From Macrostomum lignano (taxonomy: Eukaryota): DNA of 64,000 nucleotides. The stretch's first letter is position 1. Each line of letters starts with the position of its first letter. This document shows, in pieces, positions 4,454-64,000 of this stretch. Made by a program: the position numbers and the translations under genes. The notes beneath the pieces were generated by a model. That model worked only from the letters and a program-made list of their open reading frames with translations. It ran no database searches and was not told the DNA's origin. The DNA is taken from assembly GCA_002269645.1 (NCBI GenBank), contig NIVC01001513.1, positions 1 through 64,000 on the forward strand, written 5' to 3'.

Positions 4454-4653
4454 CTTGATTCGAACTGAGCCGGAACGCTGTCAAAGATCTGCATGCTTTA
4501 ATTGTTTAAGTATTTAATCGTTCGAAATCAAAAAAAATTGAGACTGTTTTACTAATTAATTTTTTTAATCCTTCACGTCGTTTCTTGACCAATTTTCGCA
4601 ATGAAATTTTAAACCCTCTCGTATTGGACTTTTCTTTTGCTTTGGGGGAGAGA

Positions 4654-4834
4654 TGTGGTGCGCAGCCTATGCGTGTACAATGCCCTTTCTCTTGCTCTCT
4701 AGCCAACGTGCTCAGTACCCCAATTTATTGCGTAACTCATAGCTGCACGTCGGCAGCTGCGTGAATATATATCGCAAATATACGGCTCTTAGAGGCCAAG
4801 ATTCTTACCCGCCAAGCGGACTACGAGCACTACA
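4654..4834 (+). repeat. 3' LTR
   Basis: Direct repeat of 319-499, preceded by the PPT and followed by the TSD. Confidence 0.95.
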
Positions 4835-5127
4835 GTTGGTTAGCTCGGGTTGGATCTGTGGTGCGCTACCGGAAATCCCTGAGCAATCACACGCACACGC
4901 AGGGTGGTACATGTACACTCTCGGTGGTACATGTACACCCTCTGTGCCTTGGGCTTTGGCGCTCATAAGTGGGCATTGCACAGGCTCTCTAAACAAATGT
5001 TCCGTCCCGAGCAAGCCCCCCCCCCCAAATAAATTTGGCCGCGCACAAAAAATCTAACCCGGGTCACAGAAGCCTTTACCCTACGGCCCCAATCGGCACT
5101 AATTACTTGCACTTTAACCTTTGTCAG

Positions 5128-6025: not shown

Positions 6026-6296
6026 ACTATGATTGGCTGACGGTTCTTTTCTCCGCTTTCTATATATGGAAACTGGTGGTGTTTTGTGTGTTTTTCGATT
6101 GTAAATCCCCCATTTCAGCTCTGCGTTATTTGTTTGCATATTTTAACTAGTCCTCACCTGAAGCTGAAATTTTCCCTTTCAAAGGGTCTGCAATTGTCTC
6201 AGCAAATCACTTATCTAAAGAGTCGGTTACTTGTCTTAGAAATTCTACGCCAGAAGCATCTCAGCTGGCCGGAGAAATTCCCTTTGTATAGTTCGT

Positions 6297-6600
6297 TATT
6301 AATTGATTACACCTGCCCCAATTGGGTCAGATGTGCAACCGACAGCTCAGCCGCAGTTATTGCTGGGCGCATCTGAGGGCTGCGTGCGGCTGTTCGGTCC
6401 AGGGACCGGGAAGTCGCCACACACAGCCTCAATTGCCCCAGCTGATGCTGGCACCCATTTTACAGCTGGGTGAACTGAAGCAATGCAGAGTTCAGTGTCT
6501 TGCTCAAGGATATAAATTGTCCTTGAGAATCGTTAAAGTTGAGAATCGAACTCCTAACATTCAAGTCGTGACTCCGACGCTCTAACCACACTAGGCTACA
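6297..6600 (-). mobile_element. tRNA-derived SINE copy A
   Basis: Minus-strand head TAGCCTAGTGTGGTTAGAGCG (A box) and GTTCGATTC (B box); central TTGAGCAAGACAC...CACCCAGCTGTAAAATGGGTGCCAGC; inverted homolog of 6765-7065. Confidence 0.75.
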
Positions 6601-6764
6601 ACTCCTTCTTGGCCAAGAATTTGGTCTCTCTCTAAAGTGTGGCTCTATATCTGGCTGAGAAATTCCCAATTTTATGCTCATGGCACATCAGAGAAATTCC
6701 CCACTAACTGATTTCTGCTGGGGCAGAAAAATTTCTCTTTAATGGAGCTTTACTAGGCTGAAAG

Positions 6765-7065
6765 ACAGCCTAGGACTCATGACTGAAAGGTTAGGGGTTC
6801 GATTCCCGATCCCACTGGAACAATTTATAGTTTTGAGCAAGACACTTAACGATCTGCATTGCTTCAGTTCACCCAGCTGTAAAATGGGTGCCAGCATTGG
6901 CTGGGGTGGTTGAGGCTGTGTGTGGCGACCCCCAGTCCTTGGACTGAACAGCCGTACGCAGCCTTCAGATGCGCCCGGCAATAGCTGCGGCTGAGCTGTC
7001 GGTTGCTCATCTGGCCGTAATGGGACAGGTGTAATCAATTATTATTATTACTATTATAGTATTAT
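6765..7065 (+). mobile_element. tRNA-derived SINE copy B
   Basis: GGTTCGATTCC B box, the same central block as copy A, and an (ATT)n tail. Confidence 0.75.
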
Positions 7066-7360
7066 TGTTAGGCTGAGAAATTCTCCTCTAATTAGTTTTC
7101 ACAAGGACTGAGAAATTCCCCTTCACTTTCGCAGCTCGATAGAGGGGAATTCCCCCTGTTCGTGTCGCTTTCTACAAGCAAACTTTCTATTTATAATTTG
7201 CTCTTTAACCCCCCAGTTTGTGTTTCGCAAATATCTCAGTAAAACATTTTTAACAGCTCATTTTCAGTTTGTCCACATTTTGTTTAAACGGAAATTATAT
7301 TTAAATACAAAACTTACTTGTTAAACTTTTGCAAAATAAATTTTGTAATCGTTGACACCT

Positions 7361-7374
7361 GTCACCATGGCAAC
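7361..7374. promoter_or_regulatory. Candidate RFX X-box
   Basis: GTCACCATGGCAAC fits GTHNYY-AT-RRNAAC. Single occurrence in the intergenic DNA upstream of RIC-3. Confidence 0.3.
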
Positions 7375-8649
7375 GCATCGAGATGCGATTTAAATGAATA
7401 ATTTCCCCTTGTTCAATCAGTGGTGAATCGCCCTTGTTTTGGTTGTTTGCATCGGGTCGGTAATGATTAAAGTGTTCGTGTGGTTTGGCTTTACTTTGTT
7501 CTGTCGGCTTTCACATGTTATTTTTGATCAGTTTTGTTTATTATTTACCTCTTAGCCCTTTGATTCCCTAATTTGGTTTTCAATATCAACTATAGAAATA
7601 TTTTCGCCTAAATTTCACAGTGTATAAAGAGACTTACACAACATATCGTCGCTGCATAAATATCACAGTGTATAAAGTGATTACCACAACATATCGGCGC
7701 TTAAAGTTTGCAGTTTATAAAGTGATTTACACAAAATATCAGATAAGCTTCACTTCTCTCCAGTTTTGGATTCAATAAGATTTCGATCAAATTATATTCC
7801 TGGGCACAGCGATATGTTGTGTAATAACATTATATATTGGTCATGAATCAGCATGATAACTGGGGTGTCTCCGTTCTTTCCTCGCCACTTTGTCAGTATT
7901 TTTCGCAACAATATTCTATAATTATTTATTGCCCCCTACTGGTTCACTTGATCAGAAAATTTAGTAGTGTGGTACGATTATGTTTCTTCAATTTTTTCCT
8001 GTATCTGAAATATAATATTATTACTAAAATATGTATTTTTGTGTTCTTTTTAATATAGTCATTGAGTAAGCCAGGCTTTTGTTTAAATGGCAAAAAAACA
8101 CATGCATGCTTTGGCCTCACAGCTGTGCCATATACTCCATGATTAAATCCATTTCTCCTCATAATTATTTTATCCTTGTCCACTGTCTCAAACTTTTTAA
8201 TTATATTGGATTATGTACGCATGCGTTTAGTGTGTTTACTATCTCGCTTTGCTAAACACATTTTCTAACAAGAAAACACTTGCTGATATTTTAACGGTTT
8301 GGTTCAATATAAATTAATGTAGTTGTGTTTTTTAGCCTTCTAGACTAGCAAGCGTGGCGGCAATCATGCATGTGCTTTGTGTCAGTTTTATTACTTCTGT
8401 ACAGAATGCTTTCATTCTGTTAAATCAGCCCCTTCCCCTACTGCCTGTCGCCTCCAATAGGCCATATGTACTTCTCTTCAGCTTCATTGTTTAACAAATT
8501 TATTAATTAAACATCATCAGGCTGCCGCTCTGCAAGGTGGCTTTCCTGGAAACAGCGGCTTCTCTTTGCTTCTTTGTGGGGGGAGAGACTTTTTACTGCG
8601 TAACTATGTGTATTTATGCATGTAGTTATCACACTAGTCGGGGAATAAG

Positions 8650-9168
<519 letters not shown>

Positions 9169-9311
9169 GATTACATCCAAATCTCTGTTACGCATCGAAT
9201 TTAGCACTGATGGAGTTTTACCGGAACGTTTGCCGAAAACTTCGCAAGCCCATCATGTTTTCACAAAATTAAACCACCCGGCTGCCCTGCCCAAAGGACC
9301 TATCCCTGCAG

Positions 9312-10849
9312 ACCCGGTCCTGGCTGGCTCTGGCCCTGATGGTGGGCGGTCTGGCGGTGCTGTACCCGCGCTACCTGCACCCCATGCTGCTCACAGTCAT
9401 GGGCCGCAGCGACGTCTCTTTCGGGGGCGGCGTCGGCGGCGCCATCAGCGATAACAGGTGAGATTTGCGCAAAGTACATTTTTCCACCGAATTGTGCTGG
9501 AATCTTATAAACACACACACTGTGCACTGTCAAAGCACATAAACACACATTATGCACTGTCAAAGCACATAAACACACACTGTTCACTATCAAAGCACAT
9601 AAACACACATTATGCACTGTCAAAGCACATAAACACACACTGTGCACTATCAAAGCACATAAACACACACATTATGCACTGTCAAAGCACAAACACACAC
9701 TGTGCACTATCAAAGCACATAAACACACACTGTGCACTATCAAAGCACATAAACACACATTATGCACTATCAAAGCACATAAACACATACCTCTATCCCA
9801 ATCCACCCCCTCAGCGCCAACATTCACCCGAGGCAGCTGCGCGATCCGCCGCTGCCAGGCGGTCGGCGCCCCTTGGCTGGGCGTCACGGCGCTGGCGCTA
9901 AATTTGCCGATAGCCCTGATACAAACGACGTTGACCACGAGGTCAACGACAAAGGCGAAGGCGGAGGCCGACGCGGCGGATTGGCGGCCGTCGCCCTCCC
10001 GGTTTACGCTGTGGGCATCCTGCTGTACCTGGCCTACACCCTGTTTAAGGCCATCGCCTCGGGCGGCGCCGGCGCTGTTCTGGCGCCGAAACGATCGTCG
10101 TCGGGTTCGACAGCCTCGTCGGCCGAAGCGATGCGAGAGCAGGCGCTGCGGGACTATTATAGGAATTTCCGATACGATCCGGTGAGTCAGCTGGCTTTGA
10201 GATAGATGTGTCAGTGGGTCAGCTGTGTCAGTGGGTCAGATGTGTCAGTTGGTCTGATGTGTCAGTGGGTCAAATGTGTCAGTGGGTCAGCTGTATCAGT
10301 GGGTCAGATGTGTCAGTGGGTCAGATGTGTCAGTGAGTCATGTTATCAGTGGGTCAGATGTGTCAGTGGGTCAGGTTATCAGTGGGTCAGCTGTGTCTGC
10401 GTCAGATTGTCAGTGGGTCAGTAATCCTTGACCCATTGAAACTCCAGGTGAGCGGCCAGTTCATCAACGGTCCGCAGTCTACAGACGACTATTTTGGCGG
10501 CGGCCTGGCCCGCAACGCGATGCCCGAGGCCGACCAGGAGGCCCGCTACCAGCGAATGCGCGTGGATCTGCAGCGCCTGCTGCATCGGCTGGACGATCAG
10601 GACGCCTCCGAAGCGGATCTGCTCCGTTTGAAAGCCCGACTGGAGGATACGGAGCGGCAGATGGCCGGCGTGCTGGCAGCGATGCGACCCCGCCAGGAGG
10701 GGGACGGTGCGCCGGACGGTGCCGATGTTGACGATGACGATCGCAACGATGAAGCTGATGAGGAGGAACCGGAGGCTGAGGGGCAGTCGACTGCGCCGGC
10801 CGATTGGGACGGCGCGGGACCGAGGCGACGCCGGCTGCGGGTTGACTGA
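9312..10849 (+). CDS. RIC3: RIC-3 (resistance to inhibitors of cholinesterase 3; nAChR ER chaperone); exons 9312-9457, 9815-10181, 10448-10849; start codon not located
   Basis: TM1 LALALMVGGLAVLYPRYLHPML; Pro/Gly spacer; TM2 GLAAVALPVYAVGILLYLAYTLFK; coiled coil LLRLKARLEDTERQMAGVL; acidic tail. GT-AG introns with consistent phases 2 and 0. Confidence 0.88.
9505..9790. repeat. 30-bp intronic minisatellite (ACACACACTGTGCACTGTCAAAGCACATAA)
   Basis: About 9 copies in the first visible RIC-3 intron. Confidence 0.92.
10206..10420. repeat. GTCAGTGGGTCAGATGT-type intronic minisatellite
   Basis: Fills the second visible RIC-3 intron. Confidence 0.88.
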
Positions 10850-13917: not shown

Positions 13918-44277
<30,360 letters not shown>

Positions 44278-44339
44278 TGATGGGAGCGGCCGGGTCAGTA
44301 GGGTGGCAACTGCCGACGGATGGGTGAGGTGTGAGGTCT

Positions 44340-44995
44340 GAGAGTGTGGGATTTGAGAGTGTGGTATTTGAGAGTGTGGGATTTGAGAGTGTGGGATTTG
44401 AGAGTGTGGGATTTGAGAGTGTGGGATTTGAGAGTGTGGGATTTGAGAGTGTGGGATTTGAGAGTGTGGGATTTGAGAGTGTGGGATTTGAGAGTGTGGG
44501 ATTTGAGAGTGTGGGATTTGAGAGTGTGGGATTTGAGAGTGTGGGATTTGAGAGTGTGGGATTTGAGAGTGTGGGATTTGAGAGTGTGGGATTTGAGAGT
44601 GTGGGATTTGAGAGTGTGGGATTTGAGAGTGTGGGATTTGAGGGTGTGGGATTTGAGAGTGTGGGATTTGAGAGTGTGGGATTTGAGAGTGTGGGATTTG
44701 AGAGTGTGGGATTTGAGAGTGTGGGATTTGAGAGTGTGGGATTTGAGAGTGTGGGATTTGAGAGTGTGGGATTTGAGAGTGTGGGATTTGAGAGTGTGGG
44801 ATTTGAGAGTGTGGGATTTGAGAGTGTGGGATTTGAGAGTGTGGGATTTGAGAGTGTGGGATTTGAGAGTGTCGGATTCGAGAGTGAGGGATTTGAGAGT
44901 GTCGGATTCGAGAGTGAGGGATTTGAGAGTGTGGAATTTGAGAGTTTGGGATTTGAGAGTGTGGGATTTGAGAATGTGGGATTTGAGTGTGGGAT
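44340..44995. repeat. 15-bp minisatellite (TTTGAGAGTGTGGGA)n
   Basis: About 43 copies just upstream of the acceptor (near 44311) of the sif start-codon exon. Confidence 0.96.
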
Positions 44996-45479
44996 TTATA
45001 AACATGAAAATTAAATTCTCTTGAATATAAGTGGACGAAAATCTCAGTTCGCTTGCTATGGTTTAAGAATGTTTTGTTAAATCTTGGCTTCCTGCAGCGG
45101 GCTCTGCGTGCACTTTTTAAAAGACAGTCCTTCGCCACTCAAGCATTTTGCAGTTTCCGACCGTCCTCTCTCTTTCTCTCCTCATGTTAGGCGATGAATG
45201 CCACTCTGAATGGGAACTTTTGCCGCCAGTTCTCCCTATCGTTTGTCGTTCCGCTCTCCTATGCAGCTGATCTCTCCCTTCCCGCCCTCCCGCTTCAGAG
45301 ATCGATACACTTTTTTGCCTTGTGGGCGGGCCGCCGCGGTGCCTGCTGGCTGATATGGCAGTTTTTTCTGTGTCAGTCAGCCAAGCACGTTTTTTTTCAA
45401 ACTGTTGCATGGATTTTGGCTGGCCAATTCGACACAGCAATCGTTTCTTGATTTTATACCGAAGTTTATTCCAGGCGGC

Positions 45480-51443: not shown

Positions 51444-52390
51444 GGCGCCTCCAATCTCGGGCACTGACACGGTAGAAAGTCAGAAAGGACTGAAAAAAGT
51501 CAATTTAAATTGAGTAGCCGATATTTCGAAATTAAATTTCTTCGTCAGGGCTGTAAGCGAGTGAAGTTTATTTGGCGCGAATTGCCATCAATATATAAAG
51601 GCGATATCGCCAGGGAGAGACGATCGATAAATTGATGTGCTCAAGCACTTAAAACAGTACGCATGGTCAGTACATAAAAACGAGTCCGAGACTATGAGAA
51701 AAGCGGGGGGTGGCTAAAACTGTACAATTGGGCCAAGACGACCTTTGAGTGTAGAATAAAAATTGTAAAAATAAATGGCAAAATAAATAGACAAGGTAAA
51801 TAAAAATTATTATTAAATGCTCAGAGCAAAAAATGCAGGTGCACCGTACACAGTGTCAGAAAAATGAATAAAAAGCAGAGAATAAATAATCTGAATAAAT
51901 CAAAATAAAGTCAATGAAAAAATCACAGAGGGGAAAAATAGCAGTAAAAGAGCCTCTGTACAGGCGTCAAAAGGGGCCTAGTTGGCAGGATCGAGCCGAC
52001 TATGAGAGAGCAGAGTCCGGAGGCTTCTCCCCTTGGTGTAGGCGGGCAGCACCGGGGTCTCGCAGTGGCGTATCACCCTGTCCTTCACTTTGGCAGCCAG
52101 GGCGTCGGAGGTCGCACAGTGGGGCAGGATCAGCGGGATGGCCGGTTTGTGCAGTATGCCGGCAAGTTCGTTGGCGCCGTGTGGAACATGAGTCCTCAGG
52201 ACCTCGATAAACTTGGCCTCCTGGCGCTGACGCCGCTCGTCAGCTCTGGGTCCTGTGCCATCGCGTGTCCAGATGCCGGTGAAGGCGAAGTCCGTCAGAC
52301 TGTGGCCACCGCTGGTGAAGTGGCGCGCTACCGGAGTGTCACGGGTGTGCCGGATGTCACCGATGTGCGCCAGCATGCGACCACGGATGA
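51440..52390 (-). mobile_element. 5'-truncated Penelope-like element (GIY-YIG C-terminal half, 3' UTR/pLTR with hammerhead)
   Basis: Minus frame 52388-51978: IRGRMLAHIGDIRHTRDTPVARHFTSGGH...RRQRQEAKFIEVLRTHVPHGAN, matching the PLE GIY-YIG C-terminal motifs (R..H...I....PVARHF...H; R...E..I..L.T..P.G.N). Hammerhead core about 430 bp downstream of the stop. Confidence 0.85.
51516..51552 (-). ncRNA. Minimal type I hammerhead ribozyme motif
   Basis: Minus strand AGCC-CTGACGA-A-GAAAT(TTA)ATTTC-GAAA-TA-TC-GGCT: stem I AGCC/GGCT, CUGANGA and GAAA cores, stem II, palindromic ATAT stem III, AUC cleavage triplet (cut after 51520). Confidence 0.8.
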
Positions 52391-53015
52391 GAGAGGGTGA
52401 GAGAGGGTAAGAGAGGGTGAGAGAGGGTGAGAGAGGGTGAGAGAGGGTGAGAGAGGGTGAGAGAGGGTGAGAGAGGGTGAGAGAGGGTGAGAGAGGGTAA
52501 GAGAGGGTGAGAGAGGGTGAGAGAGGGTGAGAGAGGGTGAGAGAGGGTGAGAGAGGGTGAGAGAGGGTGAGAGAGGGTGAGAGAGGGTGAGAGAGGGTGA
52601 GAGAGGGTGAGAGAGGGTGAGAGAGGGTGAGAGAGGGTGAGAGAGGGTAAGAGAGGGTTAGAGAGGGTTAGAGAGGGTGAGAGAGGGGGAGAGAGGGTGA
52701 GAGAGGGTGAGAGAGGGTGAGAGAGGGTGAGAGAGGGTGAGAGAGGGTGAAAGAGGGTGAGAGAGGGTGAGAGAGGGTAAGAGAGGGTGAGAGAGGGTGA
52801 GAGAGGGTAAGAGAGGGTGAGAGAGGGTGAGAGAGGGTAAGAGAGGGTGAGAGAGGGTGAGAGAGGGTGAGAGAGGGTGAGAGAGGGTGAGAGAGGGTGA
52901 AAGAGGGTGAAAGAGGGTGAGAGAGGGTGAGAGAGGGTGAAAGAGGGTGAGAGAGGGTGAAAGAGGGTGAAAGAGGGTGAAAGAGGGTGAGAGAGGTTGA
53001 GAGAGGGTGAGTGAT
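52388..53015. repeat. (GAGAGGGTGA)n 10-bp array; second tract at 51235-51385
   Basis: Direct reading; the two tracts flank the PLE fragment. Confidence 0.95.
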
Positions 53016-53019
53016 GAGT

Positions 53020-53544
53020 GAGGGTAAGAAGCCCAGCTCCATCAGCACCTCTTATTTGATACGTGCGCAGGAAACGTCCGCTGTAGCCCTGGTGTCGCAC
53101 CAGATTTTCTGGTGCAAGCTTCATCGAAGTCAGCCATCCGAGAGCGACGTCAAGGCGTATCTGAGAAGCTGGGACTTCACCACCCCCTCGGAAAGTAGAC
53201 TTGGGATGGAATGAGCTGCGATTGATGAGGGCTCGGACTGTCGGTGGGCTTGAAGAAAGTTATAAGTGGCACAGCAGAGAAAAATGTCCTTGGGGCGGCC
53301 GTAGCCCCAGCACCCACAGTTCACGGCATTCCCGAAGTCCATTCCCAGGTCAGGTGACTCCCAGTCTACGGCGCGGTGGAATGCAAAACTGGGCCGCACA
53401 TTCGATGCCCTCGGTTGTCTCCCCCCGCAAAATCAAGTTTTCCCAAACCGCATCGGTTTTCACCGGGATCTCCTGTAGCAGGGAACTGGCAGTCCATTGA
53501 TCAGCCAGTGCCAGCGCTAGCCAAACTGCTGTGTGCCGGATGTA
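53020..53544 (-). pseudogene. Degraded gene for a small secreted protein (signal-like segment, PAN-like Cys module, possible discoidin-like segment)
   Basis: One frame: YIRHTAVWLALALAD...TEGIECAAQFC...LGVT*PGNGLRECREL...CHL*LSSS...IRLDVALGW...VRHQGYSGRFLRTYQIRGADG. In-frame stops at 53352 (TGA) and 53262 (TAA); no ATG; runs into the microsatellite. Confidence 0.35.
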
Positions 53545-55132: not shown

Positions 55133-56144
55133 CAAAACGTACATAAGTGTTCTCAGAATTGATCTGAGAGTGGGACAGCGGAGCCAAATCACTTGAATCG
55201 GGTGAACGAGTGGCTGCGTGTGTGCCGTGGCCGCGCATGCGCCTGCTTGAAATGTGATTGAAAGCCAGCCAAAGCCAAGTCTCTCTCTCTCTCCTCGGCT
55301 CCAACTGTCGGCCGGTCATTAGAATCGATTTAGCAAGAGTAGAGGAGGGCATGGCGAGGTTTGAGTTCTCAAATCCTCAGTTGGGGGGGGGCGCGTCTCA
55401 AGGATCTGGGGAATTCTCTCGCCAGGCCTTCCAAGTGCAGTGGGTTTGGAAACGAGGAAGGTAAAGGTGCAATCGCACTAGGAACTAAATATTCACCTCT
55501 GCAGTGATAATGATCACCAATAGTATTAAACAGCTGGCGATTGGAAAGCCAGGGCTCCTGTACACCATGCGTTGCGGTCAAAGGCAACGGCCTTCTTATT
55601 TACCTCCTCGCTAGTCAAGGACTCGTCTTATTACAAGTAAAATTTAGATCACAAAAAAGATATAACAGCTTTTATTCTGTTAGTAGTACTGTTAGTAGGC
55701 TAGTAGCGATTCTATGATATTTTTATTTACCTATTCTTAAAAAATAATGAATCAGCATGTACTATTGCAAAGTTGCGCGCACTAATTCAAAAAGTACAAA
55801 GCAATCAGTAATGCAAGTCAATTTAGTATTGACGTACCACAGGCAGAGACTCAAGCTTAAACATTTGGCTGACGGCAGCTGCAGCTCATTATTATGCATG
55901 AAATGTTACAAGAACAGTCAGCATCCAGGCTTGCATTGCCTGCATACTTTGTTGCAGGCGTGCCACAGGAAAGCAAAGAAGGAGACCTGTTTAATTTAGA
56001 AGAATTCTGGCTTGCTTGGCTTAAACTCAAACTCAAACTCAGTACAGCTGTTAAGCACCCGCAAACGATGCAATAAATTACCGCCTCAGGTGGACTTAAG
56101 CGGGGGAGCGCTCTCTTTTTCTCTATTTCAGTTTGTTTCTCGAA

Positions 56145-56158
56145 GTTTCCATGGAAAC
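56145..56158. promoter_or_regulatory. Perfect palindromic RFX X-box upstream of PAN-GRD gene copy 1
   Basis: GTTTCCATGGAAAC, 154 nt before the ATG; conserved in copy 3. Confidence 0.55.
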
Positions 56159-56311
56159 TTGAGGCAGCCCCAAGACAATAGACTTTCCTACTAAAGCAGA
56201 GTTTGACTGCATCGGGTCTGCGCCACTTCCCCAGTTTGTTGAGATTCTCAAGCTCACAGCCTCTCACTCAGTGCTGCCTTCTCAGTCCTACTTACTGGAC
56301 GGCCTTCCAAA

Positions 56312-57596
56312 ATGTCCTTATCGAGCATTGCCGTCATCGTGGCCATCTGGAGCTCTCGAGCTGCCGGTGAGACCTTCGTCTTCGACAAGAGGCCGGACCT
56401 GTGCTTCGCGGAGGCGGCCCCGGCTGCTGGCGACCAGCGCAAAGTGCTCGGAGTTGTTGACTCTCGAGTGTGCGCGGTTGAGTGCGCGGTCAACACCAGC
56501 GTGTGCTCCGTGTACCAATACCTGCCTGGCAACAAATCCTGCGTCCTTGGCAACAGCTGCGACCTGCTGCTGAAGTGGCAGAGCACTGGCGGGCCAGCGT
56601 GCGACACGCAGACGCTTCGAGATCGGGCAGCGTGCGGGACCACAGCATCATCTACTGTCTCGACTACAGCTACAACCCAAACAACAACCACTGCACAAAC
56701 CGCATTTCATGGTAAATTGAGCATGAGATCTTCCGATCTAAATGCCGGGTCATGGGTGCCATTAGCGAACACTGTATCAGATTATAGCAATACAACACAT
56801 GGAACTTCTTCCAGCTCCTCCGTCGGACTCGAGCAACCAAACTGGATCGGTGCAGACTTTCACTCCGCCGACCGACGGCTGCTATCGAATCTCGGCTTGG
56901 GGCGCCAGAGGCGGCAAGTCATCCGCTAACGCGAACGGCGGCAGAGGCGCATTCAAGAGCGCCAATTTCATGCTGACCACGTCGCAAACTCTCACGCTTG
57001 TTGTTGGCAAGCCGGGAAACAGCGGCAGCAGCGGCGGAGGAGGCGGAGGAGGCGGCAGCTTTGTGTACACAACCGGCGACAACACGCTGCTGCTGGCGGC
57101 CGGTGGCGGAGGAGGCGGCGGCGCCGAGTCGTCCTCGTCGGTCGGCAGAAACGGAACAAGCAGCACCGGAGGCTCTTGCGGCACATCAGACGAACAAGGC
57201 GGTGACGGAGACAGCAACGATAACTCTGGCGCGGGCGGAGCTGGCTGGAGCTCAGACGGAGCAGCTCGAGCCACTGGCAATGGCGGAGGCCACGGTGGAA
57301 GAGGCATCGGCGGCAGCTGGGCCGGCGGCAACGCGGGAACGGGCAGCAACGGCTTCGGCGGCTACGGCGGAGGCGGCGGAGGCGGCAACAACGATGGTGA
57401 CAAGGGAGGCGGCGGTGGAGGCGGCGGCTTCTCTGGCGGTTGTGGAGGATCCGGCGACAGCGATGACGGCTACGGAGGCAGCGGCGGCAGCTACGCGAGC
57501 TCATCCGGCAAGCAGGCCGCGGGAACGACAGGCGGCAACGGTGAAGTCTTCGGCAAGGTGAGCATCGCTCAGGTGGACGGCTCTCTGTGCCATTAA
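56312..57596 (+). CDS. Secreted PAN/apple + Thr-rich linker + ALK/LTK-like glycine-rich domain protein, 393 aa (exons 56312-56711, 56815-57596)
   Basis: Signal peptide MSLSSIAVIVAIWSSRAAG; PAN-like CFAE...VCAVECAVNTSVCSVYQYLPGNKSCVL; intron CATG|gtaaat...cttccag|CT (103 nt, phase 1); exon 2 YRISAWGARGG...LTLVVGKPG...GGGGGGSFVY...LLLAAGGGGG...GGFSGG...GGSY...GKVSI as in the ALK/LTK glycine-rich ectodomain. No TM segment or kinase. Confidence 0.85.
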
Positions 57597-58274
57597 CATG
57601 AGCACTCAGTCATTAGTTTGCTACTGTTTATAAATACAGGAAAATAAGGGGCTTGTGAATTGGATCAACTATTTGAAGGAGCGTCATTTGAATTAACGTT
57701 GGGTTGGAAGATGTTGAGTGACAAACCAGCAACTTTGCAATCGTACAATTAAGACTTCTTACTTTCTGAATATATTTTTGATTAAATATTTTTTCTTCAC
57801 AAAGCCAATTCATTACGCGTATCGATTGACTTTCTCTTTTGTACTGCTCAGTTCTGAATTATGATTTATGCAGCCATGACCATATTAGCCGTAATCCACT
57901 GACCCATGGTAACAAGCTTGAGTGCTTTGTCACAAAAATAAAAAATTTGTTCTGGTACAATTTGATTTTTTCCGAATGTCTTCATAAAAAAGTTTCACTA
58001 CTTACAGTAGGGTGACGTGTATTAGCAACTGCAAACTGGTTTTGTTGAACTTAAATAAATGGGCGAGTCATTCTGATGCAGTGGTTTCTCTTTAAATTCT
58101 CTAGCAAAAGGCAGCGTTCACCTATTCGAGTATATTTTATAAAGCAGTCTTTCTCTAATAAACTGAAATACGTTAATGCGAGCTATTTACTCTCTATAGC
58201 AACGTTATGGCTCTGTGACTTCTTCACGCTTAAGTCAGGCTTTGGAAGGATCTAAAAGCTGTGCGATCAGTGCT

Positions 58275-59255
58275 AGGCACATTGGAAGGGTACAGTGGAA
58301 GGTTACAGTTGGTTCGCAGAGTTGAAGGGCACAGTGGAAGGGTACAGTGGAATGTCACAGTGGAAGGGCACAGTGTGGAAGGCTACAGTGGAAGGGCACA
58401 GTGGAAGGGCACAGTGGAAGGGCACAGTGGAAGGGCACAGTGGAAGGGCACAGTGTGGAAGGGTACAGTGGAAGGGCACAGTGGAAGGGTACAGTGGAAG
58501 GGTACAGTGGAAGGGCACAGTGTGGAAGGGTACAGTGGAAGGGCACAGTGTGGAAGGGTACAGTGGAAGGGCACAGTGGAAGGGTACAGTGGAAGGGTAC
58601 AGTGGAAGGGTACAGTGGAAGGGTACAGTGGAAGGGTACAGTAGAAGGGTACAGTAGAAGGGTACAGTGGGTTCGCAGAGTTGAAGGGTACAGTGGAAGG
58701 GTACAGTGGAAGGGTACAGTGGAAGGGTACAGTGGAAGGGTACAGTGGAAGGGTACAGTGGAAGGGTACAGTGGAAGGGTACAGTGGAAGGGTACAGTGG
58801 AAGGGTACAGTAGAAGGGTACAGTGGGTTCGCAGAGTTGAACGACACAGTGGAAGGGTACAGTGGAAGGGTACAGTGGAAGGGCACAGTGTGGAAGGGTA
58901 CAGTGGAAAGGCACAGTGGAAGGGTACAGTGGAAGGGTACAGTGGAAGGGTACAGTAGAAGGGTACAGTGGGTTCGCAGAGTTGAACGACACAGTGGAAG
59001 GGTACAGTTGAAGGGCACAGTGGGTTCGCAGAGTTGAACGACACAGTGGAAGGGTACAGTGGAAGGGTACAGTGGAAGGGCACAGTGTGGAAGGGTACAG
59101 TGGAAGGGCACAGTGGAAGGGTACAGTGGAAGGGTATAGTGGAAGGGTACAGTAGAAGGGTACAGTGGGTTCGCAGAGTTGAACGACACAGTGGAAGGGT
59201 ACAGTTGAAGGGCACAGTGGGTTCGCAGAGTTGAAGGGCAGAGTTGAAGGGCACA
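58275..59255. repeat. 13-bp minisatellite (GTGGAAGGGTACA)n
   Basis: About 70 units in the spacer of the inverted gene duplication. Confidence 0.94.
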
Positions 59256-60418
59256 TTGAGTAATTCATCTCCACTTGAGAGCCGCGCGTGTCTCCGCTGC
59301 AAATATCCCGGCAATTTCATGAACCTGCTGTACGAATCACTGAACGACTTGCTTCCAGGCTTACCTGACGCCTTCTTCTTCTTGGCCGAGCTGCTCCATT
59401 GCGGCTAGCAGAGATTGTAGCCGACTTGGCTCTCCCTCGTCCCGCAGACTTTGTTGGATCGCCTGCTGTCTTGGCTGGCTCCTTGCTCATTGCGTCCGGT
59501 TAGAGTCGCTGCAACGCCACTGTTATGGCTGAGACGGATCACTGGCTTATTGGTTCATGGCTGATAAACGCCAAAATGTGTTATCAAGCTCAACTTTAAT
59601 TTTTTCTACGAGTGCTAGCATTTCATATGCGCATCGCATCTTTCAGCTACAAGCCGATGAAAATAAATGGTAGCAGTCCGTGCTGGCGATTCAAGTCTGT
59701 GATCGAGCCAGAGCAAACATTATGTGGGAAAAAGCGCCCATCAGCTGGGATGTTCTACAAGTGTTTTAGTTAAGGTTTCTAAGCGAAACTCCCATGCCAG
59801 CAGTATCATAGTTTGAGGGATTGGGGGCCAGTGGCAGCTGATTGACTACAGAACTCGAATGATCTTTCCTTTAGAAAAAACCTTAAAGAATAATCACTGC
59901 ATCAGACTGACTCGCCCGTTTATTCCAGTTCAACAAAACCAGTTCAGAAATACGTGTCACCCTACTGTAAGTAGCAAAACTCGGATAGCTTTTTACATGA
60001 AAACGTTCAGAGAAAGGATCAAGTCTTTCAAGAAAAAAAGTTTAATTTTTCAGACAAAGCACTCAAGCTTGTTAACATGGGTCAGTGGATTACGGCAAAT
60101 ATGGTCATGCCTGCATAAATCATAATTCACAACTGAACAGCACAAAACCAGCAGAGAAAGTCAAACAAAGCTTGGCTCGCTTTGTGAATAAACGAATTTT
60201 ATATTCAATATTTAATTAGAAAGATCACCCTAGGTTGCAAGCAAAATATAATATAAATATTTAATCATAAATATTCAATCATATCATTTTGGATTAAATC
60301 ATAAATATAATCAAAAATTGATAAAAAATGACGTTCCTTCAAATAGTTGATCCAATTCACAAGCCCCTTATTTTCCTGTATTTATAAACAGTAGCAAACT
60401 AATGACTGAGTGCTCATG

Positions 60419-61364
60419 TTAATGGCACAGAGAGCCGTCCACCTGAGCGATGCTCACCTTGCCGAAGACTTCACCGTTGCCGCCTGTCGTTCCCGCGGCC
60501 TGCTTGCCGGATGAGCTCGCGTAGCTGCCGCCGCTGCCTCCGTAGCCGTCATCGCTGTCGCCGGATCCTCCACAACCGCCAGAGAAGCCGCCGCCTCCAC
60601 CGCCGCCTCCCTTGTCACCATCGTTGTTGCCGCCTCCTCCGCCTCCGCCAAAGCCGCCGAAGCCGTTGCTGCCCGTTCCCGCGTTGCCGCCGGCCCAGCT
60701 GCCGCCGATGCCTCTTCCACCGTGGCCTCCGCCATTGCCAGTGGCTCGAGCTGCTCCGTCTGAGCTCCAGCCAGCTCCGCCCGCGCCAGAGTTATCGTTG
60801 CTGTCTCCGTCACCGCCTTGTCCGTCGGATGTGCCGCAAGAGCCTCCGGTGCTGCTTGTTCCGTCCTTACCGACCGACGAGGAAGACTCGGCGCCGCCGC
60901 CTCCTCCGCCACCGGCCGCCAGCAGCAGCGTGTTGGGGCCGGTTGTGTACACAAAGCTGCCGCCTCCTCCGCCTCCGCCTCCTCCGCCGCTGCTGCCGCT
61001 GTTTCCCGGCTTGCCAACAACAAGCGTGAGAGTTTGCGACGTGGTCAGCATGAAATTGGCGCTCTTGAATGCGCCTCTGCCGCCGTTCGCGTTAGCGGAT
61101 GACTTGCCGCATCTGGCGCCCCAAGCCGAGATTCGATAGCAGCCGTCGGTCGGCGGAGTGAAAGTCTGCACCGATCCAGTTTGGTTGCTCGAGTCCGACG
61201 GAGGAGCTGGAGGGAGTTCCGTATGTTGTATTGCTATAGTCTGATACAGTGCTCGCTAATGGCACCCATGACCCGGCATTTAGATCGGAAGATCTCATGC
61301 TCAATTTACCATGAAATGCGGTTTGTGCAGTGGTTGCTGTTTGGGTTGTAGTTGTAGCTGTCGA
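60419..61364 (-). pseudogene. Inverted, 5'-truncated copy 2 of the PAN-GRD gene (exon-1 remnant 61364-61310, intron 61309-61207, exon 2 61206-60419)
   Basis: Near-identical to 56660-57596. Signal peptide and PAN region are absent because homology stops at TCGA 61361-61364. GARGG is changed to GARCG. Confidence 0.8.
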
Positions 61365-63235
61365 CTGAATCCTTCGGGAACTTATGTCAATAAAACTCTC
61401 TTATTTGAAGTAAATTCTTATAGAATGAACCACGTTAATGCGCAGACTCTCTATAGCTTTCAGCGATCACAAAAGTTGTAGCTGTGTGACTTCATCATGC
61501 AATGGGTCGGTATGTGACAGTGTCAGGCTTTTGGGCTCCTCGCAACTGCCGGAATGCAGATTCCAGAAGTTCGCCATCTGCACATGGGAATGCACGGTTG
61601 AGAAGGATCTCGAGCATGCAGTCTCCCATCTGTCAGATCTCGAGCATGCAGTCTCCTATCTGTCGGATCTCGAGCATGCAGTCTCCCATCTGTCGGATCT
61701 CGAGCATGTGAGCATGCAGTCTCCTATCTGTCGGATCTCGAGCATGCAGTCTCCCATCTGTCGGATCTCGAGCATGCAGTCTCCCATCTGTCAGATCTCG
61801 AGCATGTGAGCATGCAGTCTCCTATCTGTCGGATCTCGAGCATGCAGTCTCCCATCTGTCAGATCTCGAGCATGCAGTCTCCTATCTGTCGGATCTCGAG
61901 CATGCAGTCTCCTATCTGTCGGATCTCGAGCATGTGAGCATGCAGTCTCCCATCTGTCGGATCTCGAGCATGCAGTCTCCTATCTGTCGGATCTCGAGCA
62001 TGTGAGCATGCAGTCTCCTATCTGTCGGATCTCGAGCATGCAGTCTCCTATCTGTCGGATCTCGAGCATGTGAGCATGCAGTCTCCTATCTGTCGGATCT
62101 CGAGCATGCAGTCTCCCATCTGTCGGATCTCGAGCATGCAGTCTCCCATCTGTCAGATCTCGAGCATGTGAGCATGCAGTCTCCTATCTGTCGGATCTCG
62201 AGCATGCAGTCTCCCATCTGTCAGATCTCGAGCATGCAGTCTCCTATCTGTCGGATCTCGAGCATGTGAGCATGCAGTCTCCTATCTGTCGGATCTCGAG
62301 CATGTGAGCATGCAGTCTCCCATCTGTCGGATCTCGAGCATGTGAGCATGCAGTCTCCTATCTGTCGGATCTCGAGCATGCAGTCTCCTATCTGTCGGAT
62401 CTCGAGCATGTGAGCATGCAGTCTCCTATCTGTCGGATCTCGAGCATGTGAGCATGCAGTCTCCCATCTGTCGGATCTCGAGCATGCAGTCTCCCATCTG
62501 TCGGATCTCGAACATGTGAGCATGCAGTCTCCCATCTGTCGGATCTCGAACATGTGAGCATGTAGTCTCCCATCTGTCGGATCTCGAACATGTGAGCATG
62601 CAGTCTCCCATCTGTCGGATCTCGAACATGTGAGCATGCAGTCTCCCATCTGTCGGATCTCGAGCATGCAGTCTTCCATCTGTCGGTCTGAGAGCCCAAG
62701 CGCAACATATGCGGCACGAGACCGAAGAGGTAGCAACATCAAGGCCGCCTGTCTGCCACCGTCAGCACCGTATATGCACTATAGAGCAGTTTCTGCGTTA
62801 GAGTCAAAGAAAGCGCTACCCTGTTAAATAGTTAAAGACATGTAAAGTCATGTTGAAGACATCTACATGTAAATGCAGCTCAGTTCAAAGCTACTTCGGC
62901 GCTGCCATCACAGGAGCCCAATATTTGCGTAATCACACGACTCGTTCACAAGCTGCTGTATCTTTGTACATCCTATGTGTGATTTCATGGCAGCGTGAAC
63001 GAGCTATTGAGTCACATCACTGACGTAACAAGCAACAACAAAAGTGAAGAATATTACAGAGGCGAGGGAGATATTTTTAAGTGGTGTCCAATCGAAATTC
63101 TCTGTGCCAGTATCATCAGTGCTATTGGCAGCTCATTGACTACCAAAATGGTCTCTGACAAGGTCAATTCACTAATAATTTTGTTTTTCTGGCTTTTAGA
63201 GGGCTTTTATATAACTTCCCGACGGATTCAGTCGA
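61361..63235. mobile_element. Putative non-autonomous TIR element carrying an internal minisatellite
   Basis: Imperfect ~40-bp inverted ends: TCGACTGAATCCTTCGGGAACTTATGTCAATAAAACTCTC (61361-61400) and GAGGGCTTTTATATAACTTCCCGACGGATTCAGTCGA (63199-63235). No transposase seen. Confidence 0.55.
61608..62690. repeat. 30/38-bp minisatellite (GAGCATGCAGTCTCCYATCTGTCGGATCTC, with or without GAGCATGT)
   Basis: About 32 units inside the putative TIR element. Confidence 0.95.
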
Positions 63236-63798
63236 TTCTTTGCCTGAAATCTCTCTTGCCTTAAATGCTTTGTCGCCCGTAGTGCCTTCAGTATGGTTCT
63301 GTCAGCAAGCCTAAAACTAGAAAGAAAATATGCACCACCCCCCAACACTGATGGCGCGCCAGGCATACCATGGGTCTCATTTAACATCAGCTTAAAATGG
63401 AAGAGCTGAAATATCGACCGCTAATGGATAGCCTTCCCTCAAAAGAGAAGTTCTTTGGGTAACGACGCTAAGTGCCTTCACGAATAGAGATTACTATAGA
63501 AAGTTTGCCAAGTCGTTTGTTGCAGAGCACCCATCCATTCTTAAGACTCGTCTCTCAGTAGACCGTGATAAGCCCCCCATTGGTAGAAATTTTTGTGGCA
63601 CAGACTTTAACAAAAACTGAGTCTTTTTGCGTTTTCTAACATTTACAGCTTTTATCTCCCCATCAGGAGTTATCCCCTCCCATTATCGCCTCCCATTTCA
63701 AGCTACGCTCGTACGCTACTGTGGCCTCTCGTTTCCCACTCTCGCTCCCCTCCTCTCTCACTCTCTCACATTTTCTCTCTGTCAGTTTGTTTCTCAAA

Positions 63799-63812
63799 GT
63801 TTCCATGGAAAC
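63799..63812. promoter_or_regulatory. Perfect RFX X-box upstream of PAN-GRD gene copy 3
   Basis: GTTTCCATGGAAAC, same position relative to the ATG as in copy 1. Confidence 0.55.
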
Positions 63813-63965
63813 ATTAGGCAGGCCCCAAGACAATAGACTTTCCTACTAAAGCAGAGTTTGACTGCATCGGGTCTGCGCTACTTCCCCAGTTTTTGAGATT
63901 CTCAAGCTCACAGCCTCTCACTCAGTGCTGCCTTCTCATTCCTACTTACTGGACGGCCTTCCAAA

Positions 63966-64000
63966 ATGTCCTTATCGAGCATTGCCGTCATCGTGGCCAT
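63966..64000 (+). CDS. Start of PAN-GRD gene copy 3 (runs off the window)
   Basis: ATGTCCTTATCGAGCATTGCCGTCATCGTGGCCAT is identical to the start of copy 1; the ~200 nt upstream (63765-63965) is homologous to 56110-56311. Confidence 0.85.
   Translation, partial: MSLSSIAVIVA

What the first reader, a model, noticed from the sequence alone, without database searches (positions are those of the whole stretch)
56312..57596. Secreted, kinase-less ALK/LTK glycine-rich-domain protein fused to a PAN module
Seen: splicing at a phase-matched 103-nt intron joins a signal peptide, a PAN/apple-like Cys module and a Thr-rich stalk to a complete ALK/LTK-type glycine-rich domain, then a stop, with no TM segment or kinase. 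Established: in ALK/LTK this domain (TNF-like sandwich plus polyglycine-II helices) is the ligand-binding and dimerising ectodomain, and PAN modules bind glycans or proteins. Inference: an amplified family of soluble ALK-ectodomain-like molecules (decoy, ligand carrier, or polyglycine-II surface/mucus protein). The ORF track splits the gene into two overlapping ORFs and hides it.
Basis: partly seen in the sequence, partly recalled or inferred. Interest (0 to 1): 0.75.

Follow-up and report, generated by a model that had tools for sequence, protein, structure and literature searches.

The report
Secreted flatworm Apple–glycine-rich-domain protein gene
This is a real two-exon gene of the flatworm Macrostomum lignano for a secreted protein that joins a PAN/Apple module to the glycine-rich fold otherwise known from the ALK/LTK receptors; it is a further, unannotated copy of an already catalogued but unstudied gene family, so it is moderately interesting rather than new.

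Summary
Exon 1 (56312-56711), a 103-nt GT..AG intron and exon 2 (56815-57596) give a 393-aa protein. It has a signal peptide, a PAN/Apple-like Cys module, a Thr-rich linker and a complete ALK/LTK-type glycine-rich domain (GRD), then a stop. There is no TM segment or kinase anywhere in the window. GRD membership rests on a direct LTK/ALK sequence match (E 2e-8), 106 bits against an HMM of homologues (block-shuffled controls at most 27 bits), and Foldseek, whose 21 significant hits are all ALK/LTK/SCD-2 GRDs. The window is from Macrostomum lignano. A paralogue in that genome's RNA-seq-based annotation (BOX15_Mlig019850, "Apple domain-containing protein") is collinear with this protein. It has one phase-1 intron at the same place, which supports the splice. 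The family is expanded: an inverted 5'-truncated copy at 60326-61357, the start of a third copy at 63765-64000, and at least six paralogue clusters. Kinase-less GRD proteins are common: 3,279 cluster representatives, including bacterial and fungal ones, and corals also have PAN+GRD. By bit score this protein is closer to those than to ALK, so an ALK-derived decoy is unlikely. The most likely role is extracellular binding or adhesion, which is inferred only. Verdict: new member of a known, uncharacterised kind.

The parts
56111..56311 (+). Conserved 5' flank / 5' UTR of copy 1. It starts at a pyrimidine tract followed by CAG at about 56131, which may be a (trans-)splice acceptor. It holds in-frame stops upstream of the ATG and a 3-codon uORF at 56152.
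   Evidence: 95% identical to 63765-63965 upstream of copy 3. In-frame stops are shown. The start context is CCAAAATGT.
56312..56368 (+). Signal peptide, aa 1-19: MSLSSIAVIVAIWSSRAAG, with predicted cleavage before ETF.
   Evidence: This is the only hydrophobic segment of the protein. The N-terminus aligns with the paralogue's MSLSLIAAILLSTLAQDASG|YRIVF. Copy 3 encodes an identical MSLSSIAVIVA. No SignalP run was possible.
56402..56635 (+). PAN/Apple-like Cys module, aa 31-108, with 8 Cys. The core is C54-x3-C58-x6-C65-x11-C77-x-L-x-N.
   Evidence: Pfam PAN_1 scores 22.8 bits (cut-off 21.4, E 8e-5) on aa 19-111, but 19.6-21.1 bits on longer queries. The four core Cys align with coral PAN_1 domains. 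A family profile gives weak PDB hits that are PAN/apple domains: a fungal oxidase PAN, Toxoplasma MIC4 and Sarcocystis SML-2. The low-confidence AF2 core gives weak Foldseek hits to the HGF N domain and SML-2. The paralogues are named 'Apple domain-containing'.
56636..56711 (+). Thr/Ser-rich linker (aa 109-140 are 38% Thr and 19% Ser; it continues into exon 2). It is probably an O-glycosylated, mucin-like stalk. Exon 1 ends here in phase 1.
   Evidence: Composition. AF2 gives pLDDT 30-37 here, consistent with disorder.
56712..56814 (+). Intron, 103 nt, GT..AG, phase 1.
   Evidence: The paralogue has an intron at the equivalent position and phase.
56815..57596 (+). Exon 2: the end of the linker, the complete GRD (TNF-like sandwich plus polyglycine region, aa ~141-387, nt 56835-57575), a 6-aa tail with Cys392, and the TAA stop at 57594-57596.
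   Evidence: LTK E 2.4e-8 and ALK about 2e-5. The family profile matches ALK at 2e-18 over the whole domain. 105.8 bits against an HMM of 81 homologues, with shuffled controls at most 27 bits. AF2 strands at 145-229 and 359-387 have pLDDT 80-96. The top 21 Foldseek hits are all ALK/LTK/SCD-2 GRDs. Every invariant column of the 82-sequence alignment is kept.
57597..57689 (+). Proximal 3' UTR shared with copy 2. Candidate poly(A) signals lie further on: ATTAAA at 57781 and AATAAA at 57937.
   Evidence: 1 difference in 93 nt.
58279..59220 (.). 13-nt satellite array at the centre of the tail-to-tail inverted duplication.
   Evidence: The diverged flanks 57826-58095 and 59883-60164 are also inverted copies of each other, 80% identical.
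60326..61357 (-). Copy 2, an inverted and 5'-truncated duplicate. It comprises a 48-nt remnant of exon 1 (61310-61357), the intron (61207-61309), an intact exon 2 ORF (60419-61206) and the 3' UTR. It has no ATG, signal peptide or PAN module, and the sequence upstream is a 38/98-nt satellite (61612-62686).
   Evidence: 97.3% identical to 56664-57689. There is an in-frame stop just upstream of the remnant. It carries 6 amino-acid changes plus a GG insertion, including G166C in the nearly invariant WGARGG motif. No other match to aa 1-117 exists in the window.
63765..64000 (+). Copy 3: the 5' flank and the first 35 nt of the CDS (ATG at 63966). It runs off the end of the window.
   Evidence: 95.4% identical to 56111-56346. 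The first 11 amino acids are identical.

Best explanation
A two-exon Macrostomum lignano gene encodes a 393-aa secreted glycoprotein. After signal-peptide cleavage it would consist of three parts. First, an N-terminal PAN/Apple module, a fold that in other proteins binds glycans or proteins (for example the galactose-binding apple domains of MIC4 and SML-2). Second, a Thr/Ser-rich spacer that is probably O-glycosylated. Third, a C-terminal TNF-like/glycine-rich 'TG' domain of the PF12810 family, a rigid beta-sandwich carrying a polyglycine-II lattice.

The protein ends right after that domain, as its paralogues and the coral, fungal and bacterial stand-alone GRD proteins do. It is therefore a soluble or matrix-bound extracellular protein, not a receptor.

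The gene model and domain architecture are shown. The function is inferred: a bivalent extracellular binding or adhesion molecule (mucus, gland secretion, matrix or non-self recognition), in which the PAN module and the GRD surface each contact a partner. It belongs to a lineage-expanded flatworm family. The local cluster holds one complete copy, one truncated inverted copy and the start of a third.
For: - **Gene model:**. The intron is less conserved than the exon. In the paralogue BOX15_Mlig019850 the intron position and phase are conserved. That paralogue's GenBank annotation derives from a genome-guided RNA-seq transcriptome (PMC5730564).
- **Organism:** the Ty3/gypsy Pol in the window is 97% identical to an M. 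lignano protein.
- **Collinear homology with the paralogue:** 37% identity over 348 aa, E 8e-21. The N-terminal exon alone gives E 7e-8 by tblastn.
- **GRD:**
- **PAN:**
- **Secretion, no TM segment, no kinase:**
- **C-termini of homologues end at the same point:**
- **Breadth of stand-alone GRD proteins, and PAN+GRD in corals:**
Against: - No expression or junction evidence exists for this copy.
- The exact protein is absent from the 15-billion-protein collection, and no relative of 60% identity or more over the full length was found.
- Pfam's own ALK_LTK_GRD model reports no hit for this protein even at E<=10.
- The polyglycine region (pLDDT 40-55) and the PAN module (pLDDT 30-79) are poorly modelled.
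- The PAN score straddles the Pfam cut-off depending on how the query is trimmed.
- The function is purely by analogy. No member of the stand-alone GRD family has a demonstrated role (PMC4859500: 'no hint of a function').
Confidence: 0.6

Rival explanations
1. Soluble decoy or ligand carrier for an ALK-type signalling system. The free GRD would bind the worm's ALK ligand (Jeb/HEN-1-like) and modulate receptor activation.
For: The fold is that of the ALK/LTK ligand-binding domain, and the protein is secreted and lacks a kinase.
Against: - It is more similar to bacterial, fungal and coral stand-alone GRD proteins (62-95 bits) than to LTK or ALK (27-37 bits).
- It lacks the membrane-proximal EGF-like module that follows the GRD in ALK and LTK (PMC10605310).
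- From general knowledge, ALKAL ligands are a vertebrate feature.
- The family is far too broad taxonomically to be tied to ALK signalling.
- Neither an ALK nor a ligand gene of M. lignano was examined here.
Confidence: 0.07
2. A silent or decaying duplicate. The copy sits in a satellite-rich, rearranged region and is not expressed. Only the annotated paralogues function.
For: - It is flanked by satellites, a truncated inverted copy and a retrotransposon-rich neighbourhood.
- It is not present in the NCBI or UniProt protein sets.
- The only public model touching the locus is a chimeric mis-prediction (P0006).
- The assembly is known to contain many recent duplicates (PMC5730564).
Against: - The 393-codon ORF is intact, with canonical splice sites and a good start context, and all invariant family residues are retained.
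- The exon is more conserved than the intron between the copies.
- The GenBank annotation deliberately dropped transcripts overlapping repeats, so absence from it is weak evidence.
Confidence: 0.15
3. Two separate products rather than one spliced gene: a short PAN protein from 56312-56929 and a leaderless Gly-rich protein from ATG 56799.
For: Both ORFs exist mechanically.
Against: - ATG 56799 lies inside the AT-richer intron and is ACG in copy 2.
- The read-through tail of ORF 1 has no homologue.
- The paralogue joins the two homologous parts through an intron at the same place.
Confidence: 0.03

Closest known systems
Macrostomum lignano BOX15_Mlig019850g1/g2 (PAA61162.1/PAA91998.1, UniProt A0A267H149, 'Apple domain-containing protein', 403 aa) and BOX15_Mlig028980g1 (PAA57358.1, 373 aa)
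   Same: Same species. Same order of parts: signal peptide, PAN/Apple-like module, linker, GRD, then a short Cys-containing tail. 37% identity over 348 aa. Two coding exons with one phase-1 intron at the equivalent position.
   Different: Only 37% identical. The linker here is Thr-rich, whereas other paralogues have different linkers or D/Y-rich ones. The intron is 103 nt here and 744 nt there. This copy is not in the public protein sets. None of these proteins has a known function.
Coral PAN+GRD proteins (Porites harrisoni ABFA07_017308, 450 aa; Pocillopora verrucosa 'putative lysozyme-like protein', 536 aa)
   Same: An N-terminal PAN_1 domain and a C-terminal PF12810 GRD that ends the protein, with no kinase. 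The core PAN cysteines align.
   Different: The coral proteins carry extra modules (EGF/cEGF and a spacer domain) between PAN and GRD. The N-termini show no pairwise significance against the window protein. Whether the shared architecture is inherited or convergent is not resolved.
ALK/LTK/SCD-2 receptor ectodomain GRD ('TG' supradomain; PDB 7NX0, 7N00, 7LIR)
   Same: Homologous domain. Sequence E 2e-8 directly and 2e-18 for the family profile. Foldseek E 2.5e-10, with only ALK-family hits above noise. Shares the YxIxAxGAxGG motif and polyglycine runs.
   Different: No EGF-like module, TM helix or kinase. No MAM/LDLa region. 20-29% identity. Ligand binding is unknown.
Stand-alone 'glycine rich protein' members of PF12810 in bacteria and fungi (e.g. 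Bacillus cereus glycine-rich protein, Kwoniella I302_101138, Drechmeria coniospora)
   Same: Kinase-less and predicted secreted. The GRD is the main or terminal domain. 35-41% identity. Function unknown (PMC4859500).
   Different: They have no PAN module or mucin-like stalk and different partner domains (for example PF18962, the secretion sorting domain, in some hits). The gene here has an intron and a eukaryotic signal peptide.
Phage receptor-binding proteins with polyglycine-II domains (Salmonella phage S16 gp38; cyanophage Pam3 gp24)
   Same: A TNF-like domain plus a glycine-rich PGII lattice used as an extracellular recognition device. Pam3 gp24 superposes on the C. elegans ALK GRD (PMC9608196). 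This gives a functional analogy for a binding or adhesin role.
   Different: No phage protein appeared among the significant sequence or Foldseek hits. The phage proteins are trimeric fibre tips. The relation is an analogy only.

Membership tests
PF12810 ALK_LTK_GRD (TNF-like/glycine-rich 'TG' domain) | Significant full-length sequence similarity to family members, beyond glycine composition | tested here: met
   phmmer gives LTK E 2.4e-8 and ALK 2e-5. An HMM built from 81 homologues without the query gives 105.8 bits; residue shuffles reach at most -40.7 bits and 10-aa block shuffles at most 27.1 bits. The family profile matches ALK at E 2e-18 across the domain.
PF12810 ALK_LTK_GRD (TNF-like/glycine-rich 'TG' domain) | Hit to Pfam's own model above the gathering score (24.5 bits) | tested here: inconclusive
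   hmmscan lists no PF12810 hit for this protein even at E<=10. Homologues pass or nearly pass: P0250 34.3, P0002 35.2, P0047 34.3, P0003 26.8 and paralogue P0248 23.0 bits. The miss is probably due to the composition-bias filter. This is an operational criterion, not a structural one.
PF12810 ALK_LTK_GRD (TNF-like/glycine-rich 'TG' domain) | TNF-like beta-sandwich whose strands are split in sequence by the glycine-rich insert | tested here: met
   AF2 places strands at 145-229 and 359-387 with pLDDT 80-96. The 21 Foldseek hits with E<=1e-5 are all ALK/LTK/SCD-2 GRDs (TM 0.41-0.54 normalised to target length), and the next hit has E of about 1.
PF12810 ALK_LTK_GRD (TNF-like/glycine-rich 'TG' domain) | Multiple polyglycine segments forming a PGII-helix lattice | tested here: inconclusive
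   At sequence level there are four G7-G8 runs plus shorter ones at invariant family columns. The 3-D lattice is not confidently modelled (pLDDT 40-55 for aa 240-350).
ALK/LTK receptor tyrosine kinases | Transmembrane helix and intracellular tyrosine-kinase domain | tested here: not met
   The stop comes 6 aa after the last GRD strand. There is no hydrophobic segment beyond the signal peptide. No kinase motif occurs in six frames of the 64-kb window, and only satellite ORFs lie downstream.
ALK/LTK receptor tyrosine kinases | EGF-like module after the GRD; MAM/LDLa modules before it (ALK) | tested here: not met
   Pfam finds none. For the receptor architecture see PMC10605310.
ALK/LTK receptor tyrosine kinases | Binding of an ALK ligand (ALKAL, Jeb, HEN-1) | not testable with these tools
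   This needs binding assays. Ligand-contact residues were not compared.
PAN/Apple domain (PF00024 / PROSITE Apple) | Profile match above the curated cut-off | tested here: met
   PAN_1 scores 22.8 bits against a cut-off of 21.4, E 8.2e-5, on aa 19-111. The result is borderline: 21.1 bits on aa 1-133 and 19.6 bits on the full protein. Only profile positions 15-51 of 76 are matched.
PAN/Apple domain (PF00024 / PROSITE Apple) | Conserved core cysteine pattern | tested here: met
   C54, C58, C65 and C77 align with the cysteines of the coral PAN_1 domains. C54 and C77 are invariant across the M. lignano paralogues.
PAN/Apple domain (PF00024 / PROSITE Apple) | PAN fold (helix packed on an antiparallel sheet) | tested here: inconclusive
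   The AF2 model has mean pLDDT 51 (core 66-79), with strand, helix and two strands. Foldseek gives no hit with E<=0.001, but the weak hits with the highest probability are the HGF N domain and the SML-2 apple lectin, at rmsd 1.0-3.0 A over 37-53 residues. The profile against PDB gives the PAN of 6RYX at E 0.015, MIC4 at 0.03 and SML-2 at 0.29.
M. lignano Apple-GRD secreted protein family | Collinear homology over signal peptide, PAN module and GRD; shared intron position and phase; protein ends after the GRD | tested here: met
   C-termini are shown.

The most novel reading that the evidence does not exclude
Apple/PAN-GRD proteins of flatworms and cnidarians may be one ancient metazoan family of secreted polyglycine-II-lattice binding proteins. 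They would represent the free-standing form from which the ALK/LTK ligand-binding ectodomain was recruited. In M. lignano they may have expanded as gland-secreted adhesion, mucus or recognition factors, and could still bind ALK-type ligands.
Probability: 0.12. Interest if true: 0.6.

Novelty: new member of a known kind. Interest (0 to 1): 0.3.

Why it matters
The ALK/LTK glycine-rich domain is structurally unusual and is known functionally only as a cytokine-binding receptor module. Free, secreted versions fused to a lectin-type PAN module are present in a tractable flatworm (transgenesis is established, PMC5730564, and from general knowledge RNAi is routine), and they are duplicated there. 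They offer a way to ask what this fold does outside receptor signalling, and where the ALK ectodomain came from.

In practical terms, the locus shows that current M. lignano protein sets miss or mis-model members of this family in repeat-rich regions. Automatic names such as 'receptor protein-tyrosine kinase', 'Loricrin' and 'PE-PGRS' given to paralogues are misleading.

Tried and rejected
1. Pfam hmmscan of the full protein and of exon 2 alone found no PF12810 hit. Membership was therefore tested by other routes.
2. A word-index search with the N-terminal 133 aa found nothing. Pairwise BLASTP of the N-terminus against the coral and P0003 N-termini was not significant.
The 265-aa ORF is not on record, and the exact 393-aa sequence is not in the collection.
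4. The weak tblastn Gly-rich hits at about 14.1-14.6 kb, 20.3 kb, 26.0-26.4 kb, 44.2 kb and 49.6-49.9 kb were rejected as GRD paralogues. They fall in poly-Q/Gly low-complexity ORFs or satellite arrays.
5. Rfam and tRNA scans of the window were empty.
6. The three 2021 ALK/LTK structure papers are not held. No paper mentions the paralogue locus tags, or PF12810 beyond one fungal genome paper.
7. The alternative donor AAG|GTGAGC at 57557/57558 was considered as a route to downstream exons and rejected. It would remove the last sandwich strand (KVSIAQV), which aligns with the C-terminal strand of homologues, and nothing coding lies downstream.
8. dN/dS between copies 1 and 2 rests on too few substitutions to be informative: about 7-8 nonsynonymous against 4-6 synonymous.
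Full report

An ATG at 56312 sits in a good context (CCAAAATGT) and is preceded by in-frame stops. It opens a 400-nt exon that ends ...CAT G at 56711. A 103-nt GT..AG intron follows (GTAAAT...CTTCTTCCAG, GC 43% against 60% and 66% in the flanking exons). Exon 2 runs from 56815 to a TAA at 57594-57596. The spliced CDS is 1182 nt and encodes 393 aa.

The mechanical ORF list does split the gene into two overlapping ORFs in different frames, 56312-56929 and 56799-57596. I enumerated all 48 GT..AG pairs that restore an open frame. The proposed junction has the best donor and polypyrimidine score. The same donor with an acceptor at 56787 is a possible alternative and would add only nine residues to the linker.

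**2. Which organism, and is there independent support for the splice?**

The window contains an intact Ty3/gypsy Gag-Pol ORF (500-4453). It is 97% identical to Macrostomum lignano BOX15_Mlig008473g1, and many other M. lignano hits follow. The window is very rich in satellites and has about 50% GC. This fits the description of that genome, in which LTR elements make up 21% and simple or tandem repeats 15% (PMC5730564). The source is therefore M. lignano or a very close relative.

An exhaustive phmmer search with the exon-2 protein turned up M. lignano paralogues:
- P0248 = PAA61162.1/PAA91998.1 (BOX15_Mlig019850g1/g2, 403 aa; UniProt 'Apple domain-containing protein').
- P0211 = PAA57358.1 (Mlig028980g1, 373 aa).
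- Several fragmentary models.

The window protein aligns collinearly with P0248 from the initiator Met through the Cys module into the GRD, with 37% identity over 348 aa and E 8e-21. The N-terminal exon alone gives E 7e-8 by tblastn on the paralogue's locus.

I reconstructed the paralogue's CDS on GCA_002269645.1. It has exactly two coding exons and one phase-1 intron (ATG|GTGAGA...CAG, 744 nt) after residue 129, about 21 residues before GCYRIRAWG. The window intron is also phase 1, lies after residue 133 and is 22 residues before GCYRISAWG. That GenBank annotation was built from a genome-guided RNA-seq transcriptome, and transcripts overlapping repeat annotations were removed (PMC5730564). 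The homologous intron is therefore transcript-supported in the paralogue. The filtering also gives a plausible reason why the window gene is missing from public protein sets: the exact sequence is not in the collection.

**3. The domains**

*Signal peptide.* MSLSSIAVIVAIWSSRAAG|ETF is the only hydrophobic segment. The maximum Kyte-Doolittle 19-residue average elsewhere is 1.08. The paralogues have equivalent leaders.

*PAN/Apple module.* Eight cysteines lie between residues 31 and 108. Pfam PAN_1 scores 22.8 bits (cut-off 21.4, E 8e-5) when residues 19-111 are scanned. It falls just below the cut-off with longer queries. Further points:
- The four core cysteines (C54, C58, C65, C77) align with bona fide PAN_1 domains of the coral homologues (coral PAN_1 E 1e-7).
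- A profile of the M. lignano N-termini gives only weak PDB hits. Five of the top nine are PAN/apple-containing entries: the three 6RYX-type fungal oxidase chains (matched at residues 34-77, where I recall the PAN domain lies; not checked here), Toxoplasma MIC4 and Sarcocystis SML-2.
- A low-confidence AF2 model (core pLDDT 66-79) gives no significant Foldseek hit. Its weak hits with the highest probability are again PAN domains, the HGF N domain and SML-2.

I regard the PAN call as probable, but not proven structurally.

*Linker.* Residues 109-140 are 38% Thr and 19% Ser, so the linker is mucin-like. It is predicted disordered. There are four N-glycosylation sequons.

*GRD.* The evidence is as follows:
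- phmmer against PDB sequences hits LTK (E 2.4e-8, including the CYRISAWGARGGK / YLISAYGAAGGK block) and ALK.
- A profile of the query plus 81 homologues matches ALK, LTK and C. elegans SCD-2 over the entire domain (E 2e-18 to 7e-11).
- To exclude a composition artefact I built an HMM from the 81 homologues without the query. The window protein scores 105.8 bits. 500 residue shuffles reach at most -40.7 bits, and 500 shuffles of 10-residue blocks at most 27.1 bits.
- AF2 models the TNF-like sandwich strands (145-229 and 359-387) at pLDDT 80-96. The glycine-rich insert reaches only 40-55.
- The 21 Foldseek hits with E<=1e-5 are exclusively ALK/LTK/SCD-2 GRD entries. A cliff to E of about 1 follows.
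- All invariant columns of the 82-sequence alignment are satisfied.

One caveat remains. Pfam's own PF12810 model reports nothing for this protein, although it does for homologues. I attribute this to bias filtering.

**4. Kinase-less and soluble?**

The stop follows the last sandwich strand by six residues. M. lignano paralogues (…RYGSCA, …NHTACTG, …PASTCA), coral, fungal and bacterial homologues all end at the same point.

A consensus-like donor (AAG|GTGAGC, 57557/57558) lies before the stop. Using it would delete the terminal strand. Downstream on the + strand there are only an AT-rich 3' region with poly(A) signals, a 13-nt satellite and then the 3' end of an inverted gene copy. No tyrosine-kinase catalytic-loop or glycine-loop motif occurs in any frame of the window.

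**5. Local amplification**

- 56664-57689 is repeated in inverted orientation at 61357-60326 with 97.3% identity.
- This copy 2 keeps the intron, an intact exon 2 and the 3' UTR, but only the last 48 nt of exon 1.
- An in-frame stop and then a 38/98-nt satellite lie upstream of copy 2. No signal-peptide or PAN-coding sequence exists elsewhere in the window.
- Copy 2 carries G166C in the nearly invariant WGARGG motif. It is most simply a truncated, probably dead duplicate.
- The intron is more diverged than exon 2 between the copies (5.8% against 1.7%).
- A third copy begins at 63765 with a 95% identical 5' flank and identical first 11 codons. It runs off the window.

**6. How it compares with what is known**

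Kinase-less GRD proteins are the rule rather than the exception. 3,279 cluster representatives match at E<=1e-3 and 432 at E<=1e-10. They include giant multi-GRD proteins, roughly 300-aa proteins in marine assemblies, and proteins from corals, fungi (Kwoniella) and bacteria (Bacillus, plus proteins with the PF18962 sorting domain).

By bit score the window protein is nearer to these (62-95 bits) than to LTK or ALK (27-37 bits). It is therefore not a truncated ALK.

PAN+GRD without a kinase also exists in corals (Porites, Pocillopora). In M. lignano, paralogues are already deposited, under uninformative or wrong automatic names: 'hypothetical', 'Apple domain-containing', 'receptor protein-tyrosine kinase', 'Loricrin', 'PE-PGRS'.

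I found no functional study. The only paper in the searchable library that mentions PF12810 says no function can be inferred (PMC4859500).

**7. Mechanism**

*Shown.* A gene model for a secreted three-part protein.

*Inferred.* A role in extracellular binding or adhesion. PAN/apple modules of the kind weakly matched here (MIC4, SML-2) are, from general knowledge, galactose-binding lectins. The Thr-rich stalk would be O-glycosylated. PGII-lattice domains serve as rigid recognition surfaces in ALK/LTK (cytokine binding) and in phage adhesins (S16 gp38, Pam3 gp24; PMC9608196 and PMC13243192).

The decoy reading is possible but disfavoured (see section 6, and the missing EGF-like module). Non-expression of this particular copy cannot be excluded.

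**8. Verdict**

This is a new, unannotated member of a known but uncharacterised family. Interest is modest.

Noticed in passing
window 500-4453 (+): Intact 1317-aa Ty3/gypsy Gag-Pol ORF (protease, RT, RNase H, integrase). It is 97% identical to M. lignano BOX15_Mlig008473g1, so it is probably a recently active element. It identifies the source organism.
   Followed up: partly
window 56254-56691 (-), 56882-57349 (-), 52357-53124 (-), 43921-45138 (-); protein P0006 (MetaClust UPI0007A34941): A 520-aa public protein model is a chimera. It starts with a copy-2-type GRD fragment. It then strings together antisense ORFs of the GRD gene and pieces of ORFs at about 53 kb and 44 kb on the minus strand. 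An earlier annotation therefore mis-modelled this locus.
   Followed up: partly
window 57597-60420: Copies 1 and 2 lie tail to tail as a large imperfect palindrome around a 13-nt satellite (58279-59220). The inner flanks 57826-58095 and 59883-60164 are only 80% identical, while the genes are 97% identical. This suggests gene conversion or a two-step duplication; an assembly artefact is not excluded.
   Followed up: partly
whole window, e.g. 8.5-9.4 kb, 12.3-13.3 kb, 17.2-18.9 kb, 25.9-26.5 kb, 29.6-30.7 kb, 34.7-35.6 kb, 40.7-43.2 kb, 44.3-45.0 kb, 45.8-46.6 kb, 48.5-50.1 kb, 52.4-53.1 kb, 54.5-55.1 kb, 61.6-62.7 kb: The window has an extraordinary density of micro- and minisatellite arrays. 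They generate long spurious ORFs in all frames and strong GC/AT-skew swings.
   Followed up: no
window 56111-56135: The block conserved between copies 1 and 3 begins at a pyrimidine tract followed by CAG (ctctctttttctctatttcag|ttt), about 180 nt upstream of the ATG. It may be a trans-splice or 5'-exon acceptor; 38.8% of M. lignano genes are trans-spliced (PMC5730564).
   Followed up: no
window 5174-6025 (+); 13918-14979 (-); 33690-34700 (-); 43921-44300 (-): Other probable coding exons: a PHD-finger ORF (Pfam E 6e-7); two poly-Q/Gly-rich ORFs with no Pfam hit; and an ORF end that looked EVH1-like by eye but gave no such Pfam hit. The weak tblastn 'GRD' hits in these regions are low-complexity matches.
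   Followed up: partly
proteins P0273 (A0A1I8GWL7) and P0227 (A0A1I8J935), M. lignano paralogue fragments: In these paralogues the linker between the Cys module and the GRD is rich in D, Y and S (DYDSDYN repeats) instead of Thr. The stalk is therefore the fast-evolving part of the family.
   Followed up: no
proteins P0190-P0199 (ENA/Logan contigs): The best-scoring relatives in the 1.8-billion-protein library are giant proteins of 2,000-4,000 aa with up to seven tandem GRDs. Some also carry F5/8 type C or EGF modules. Their organisms are unknown.
   Followed up: partly
locus L001/L002 (GCA_002269645.1 NIVC01002065.1 and NIVC01000067.1): The paralogue Mlig019850 lies within the span of a gene called on the opposite strand (701-9423). 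It is present on two contigs, in line with the recent genome duplication of the DV1 line.
   Followed up: no
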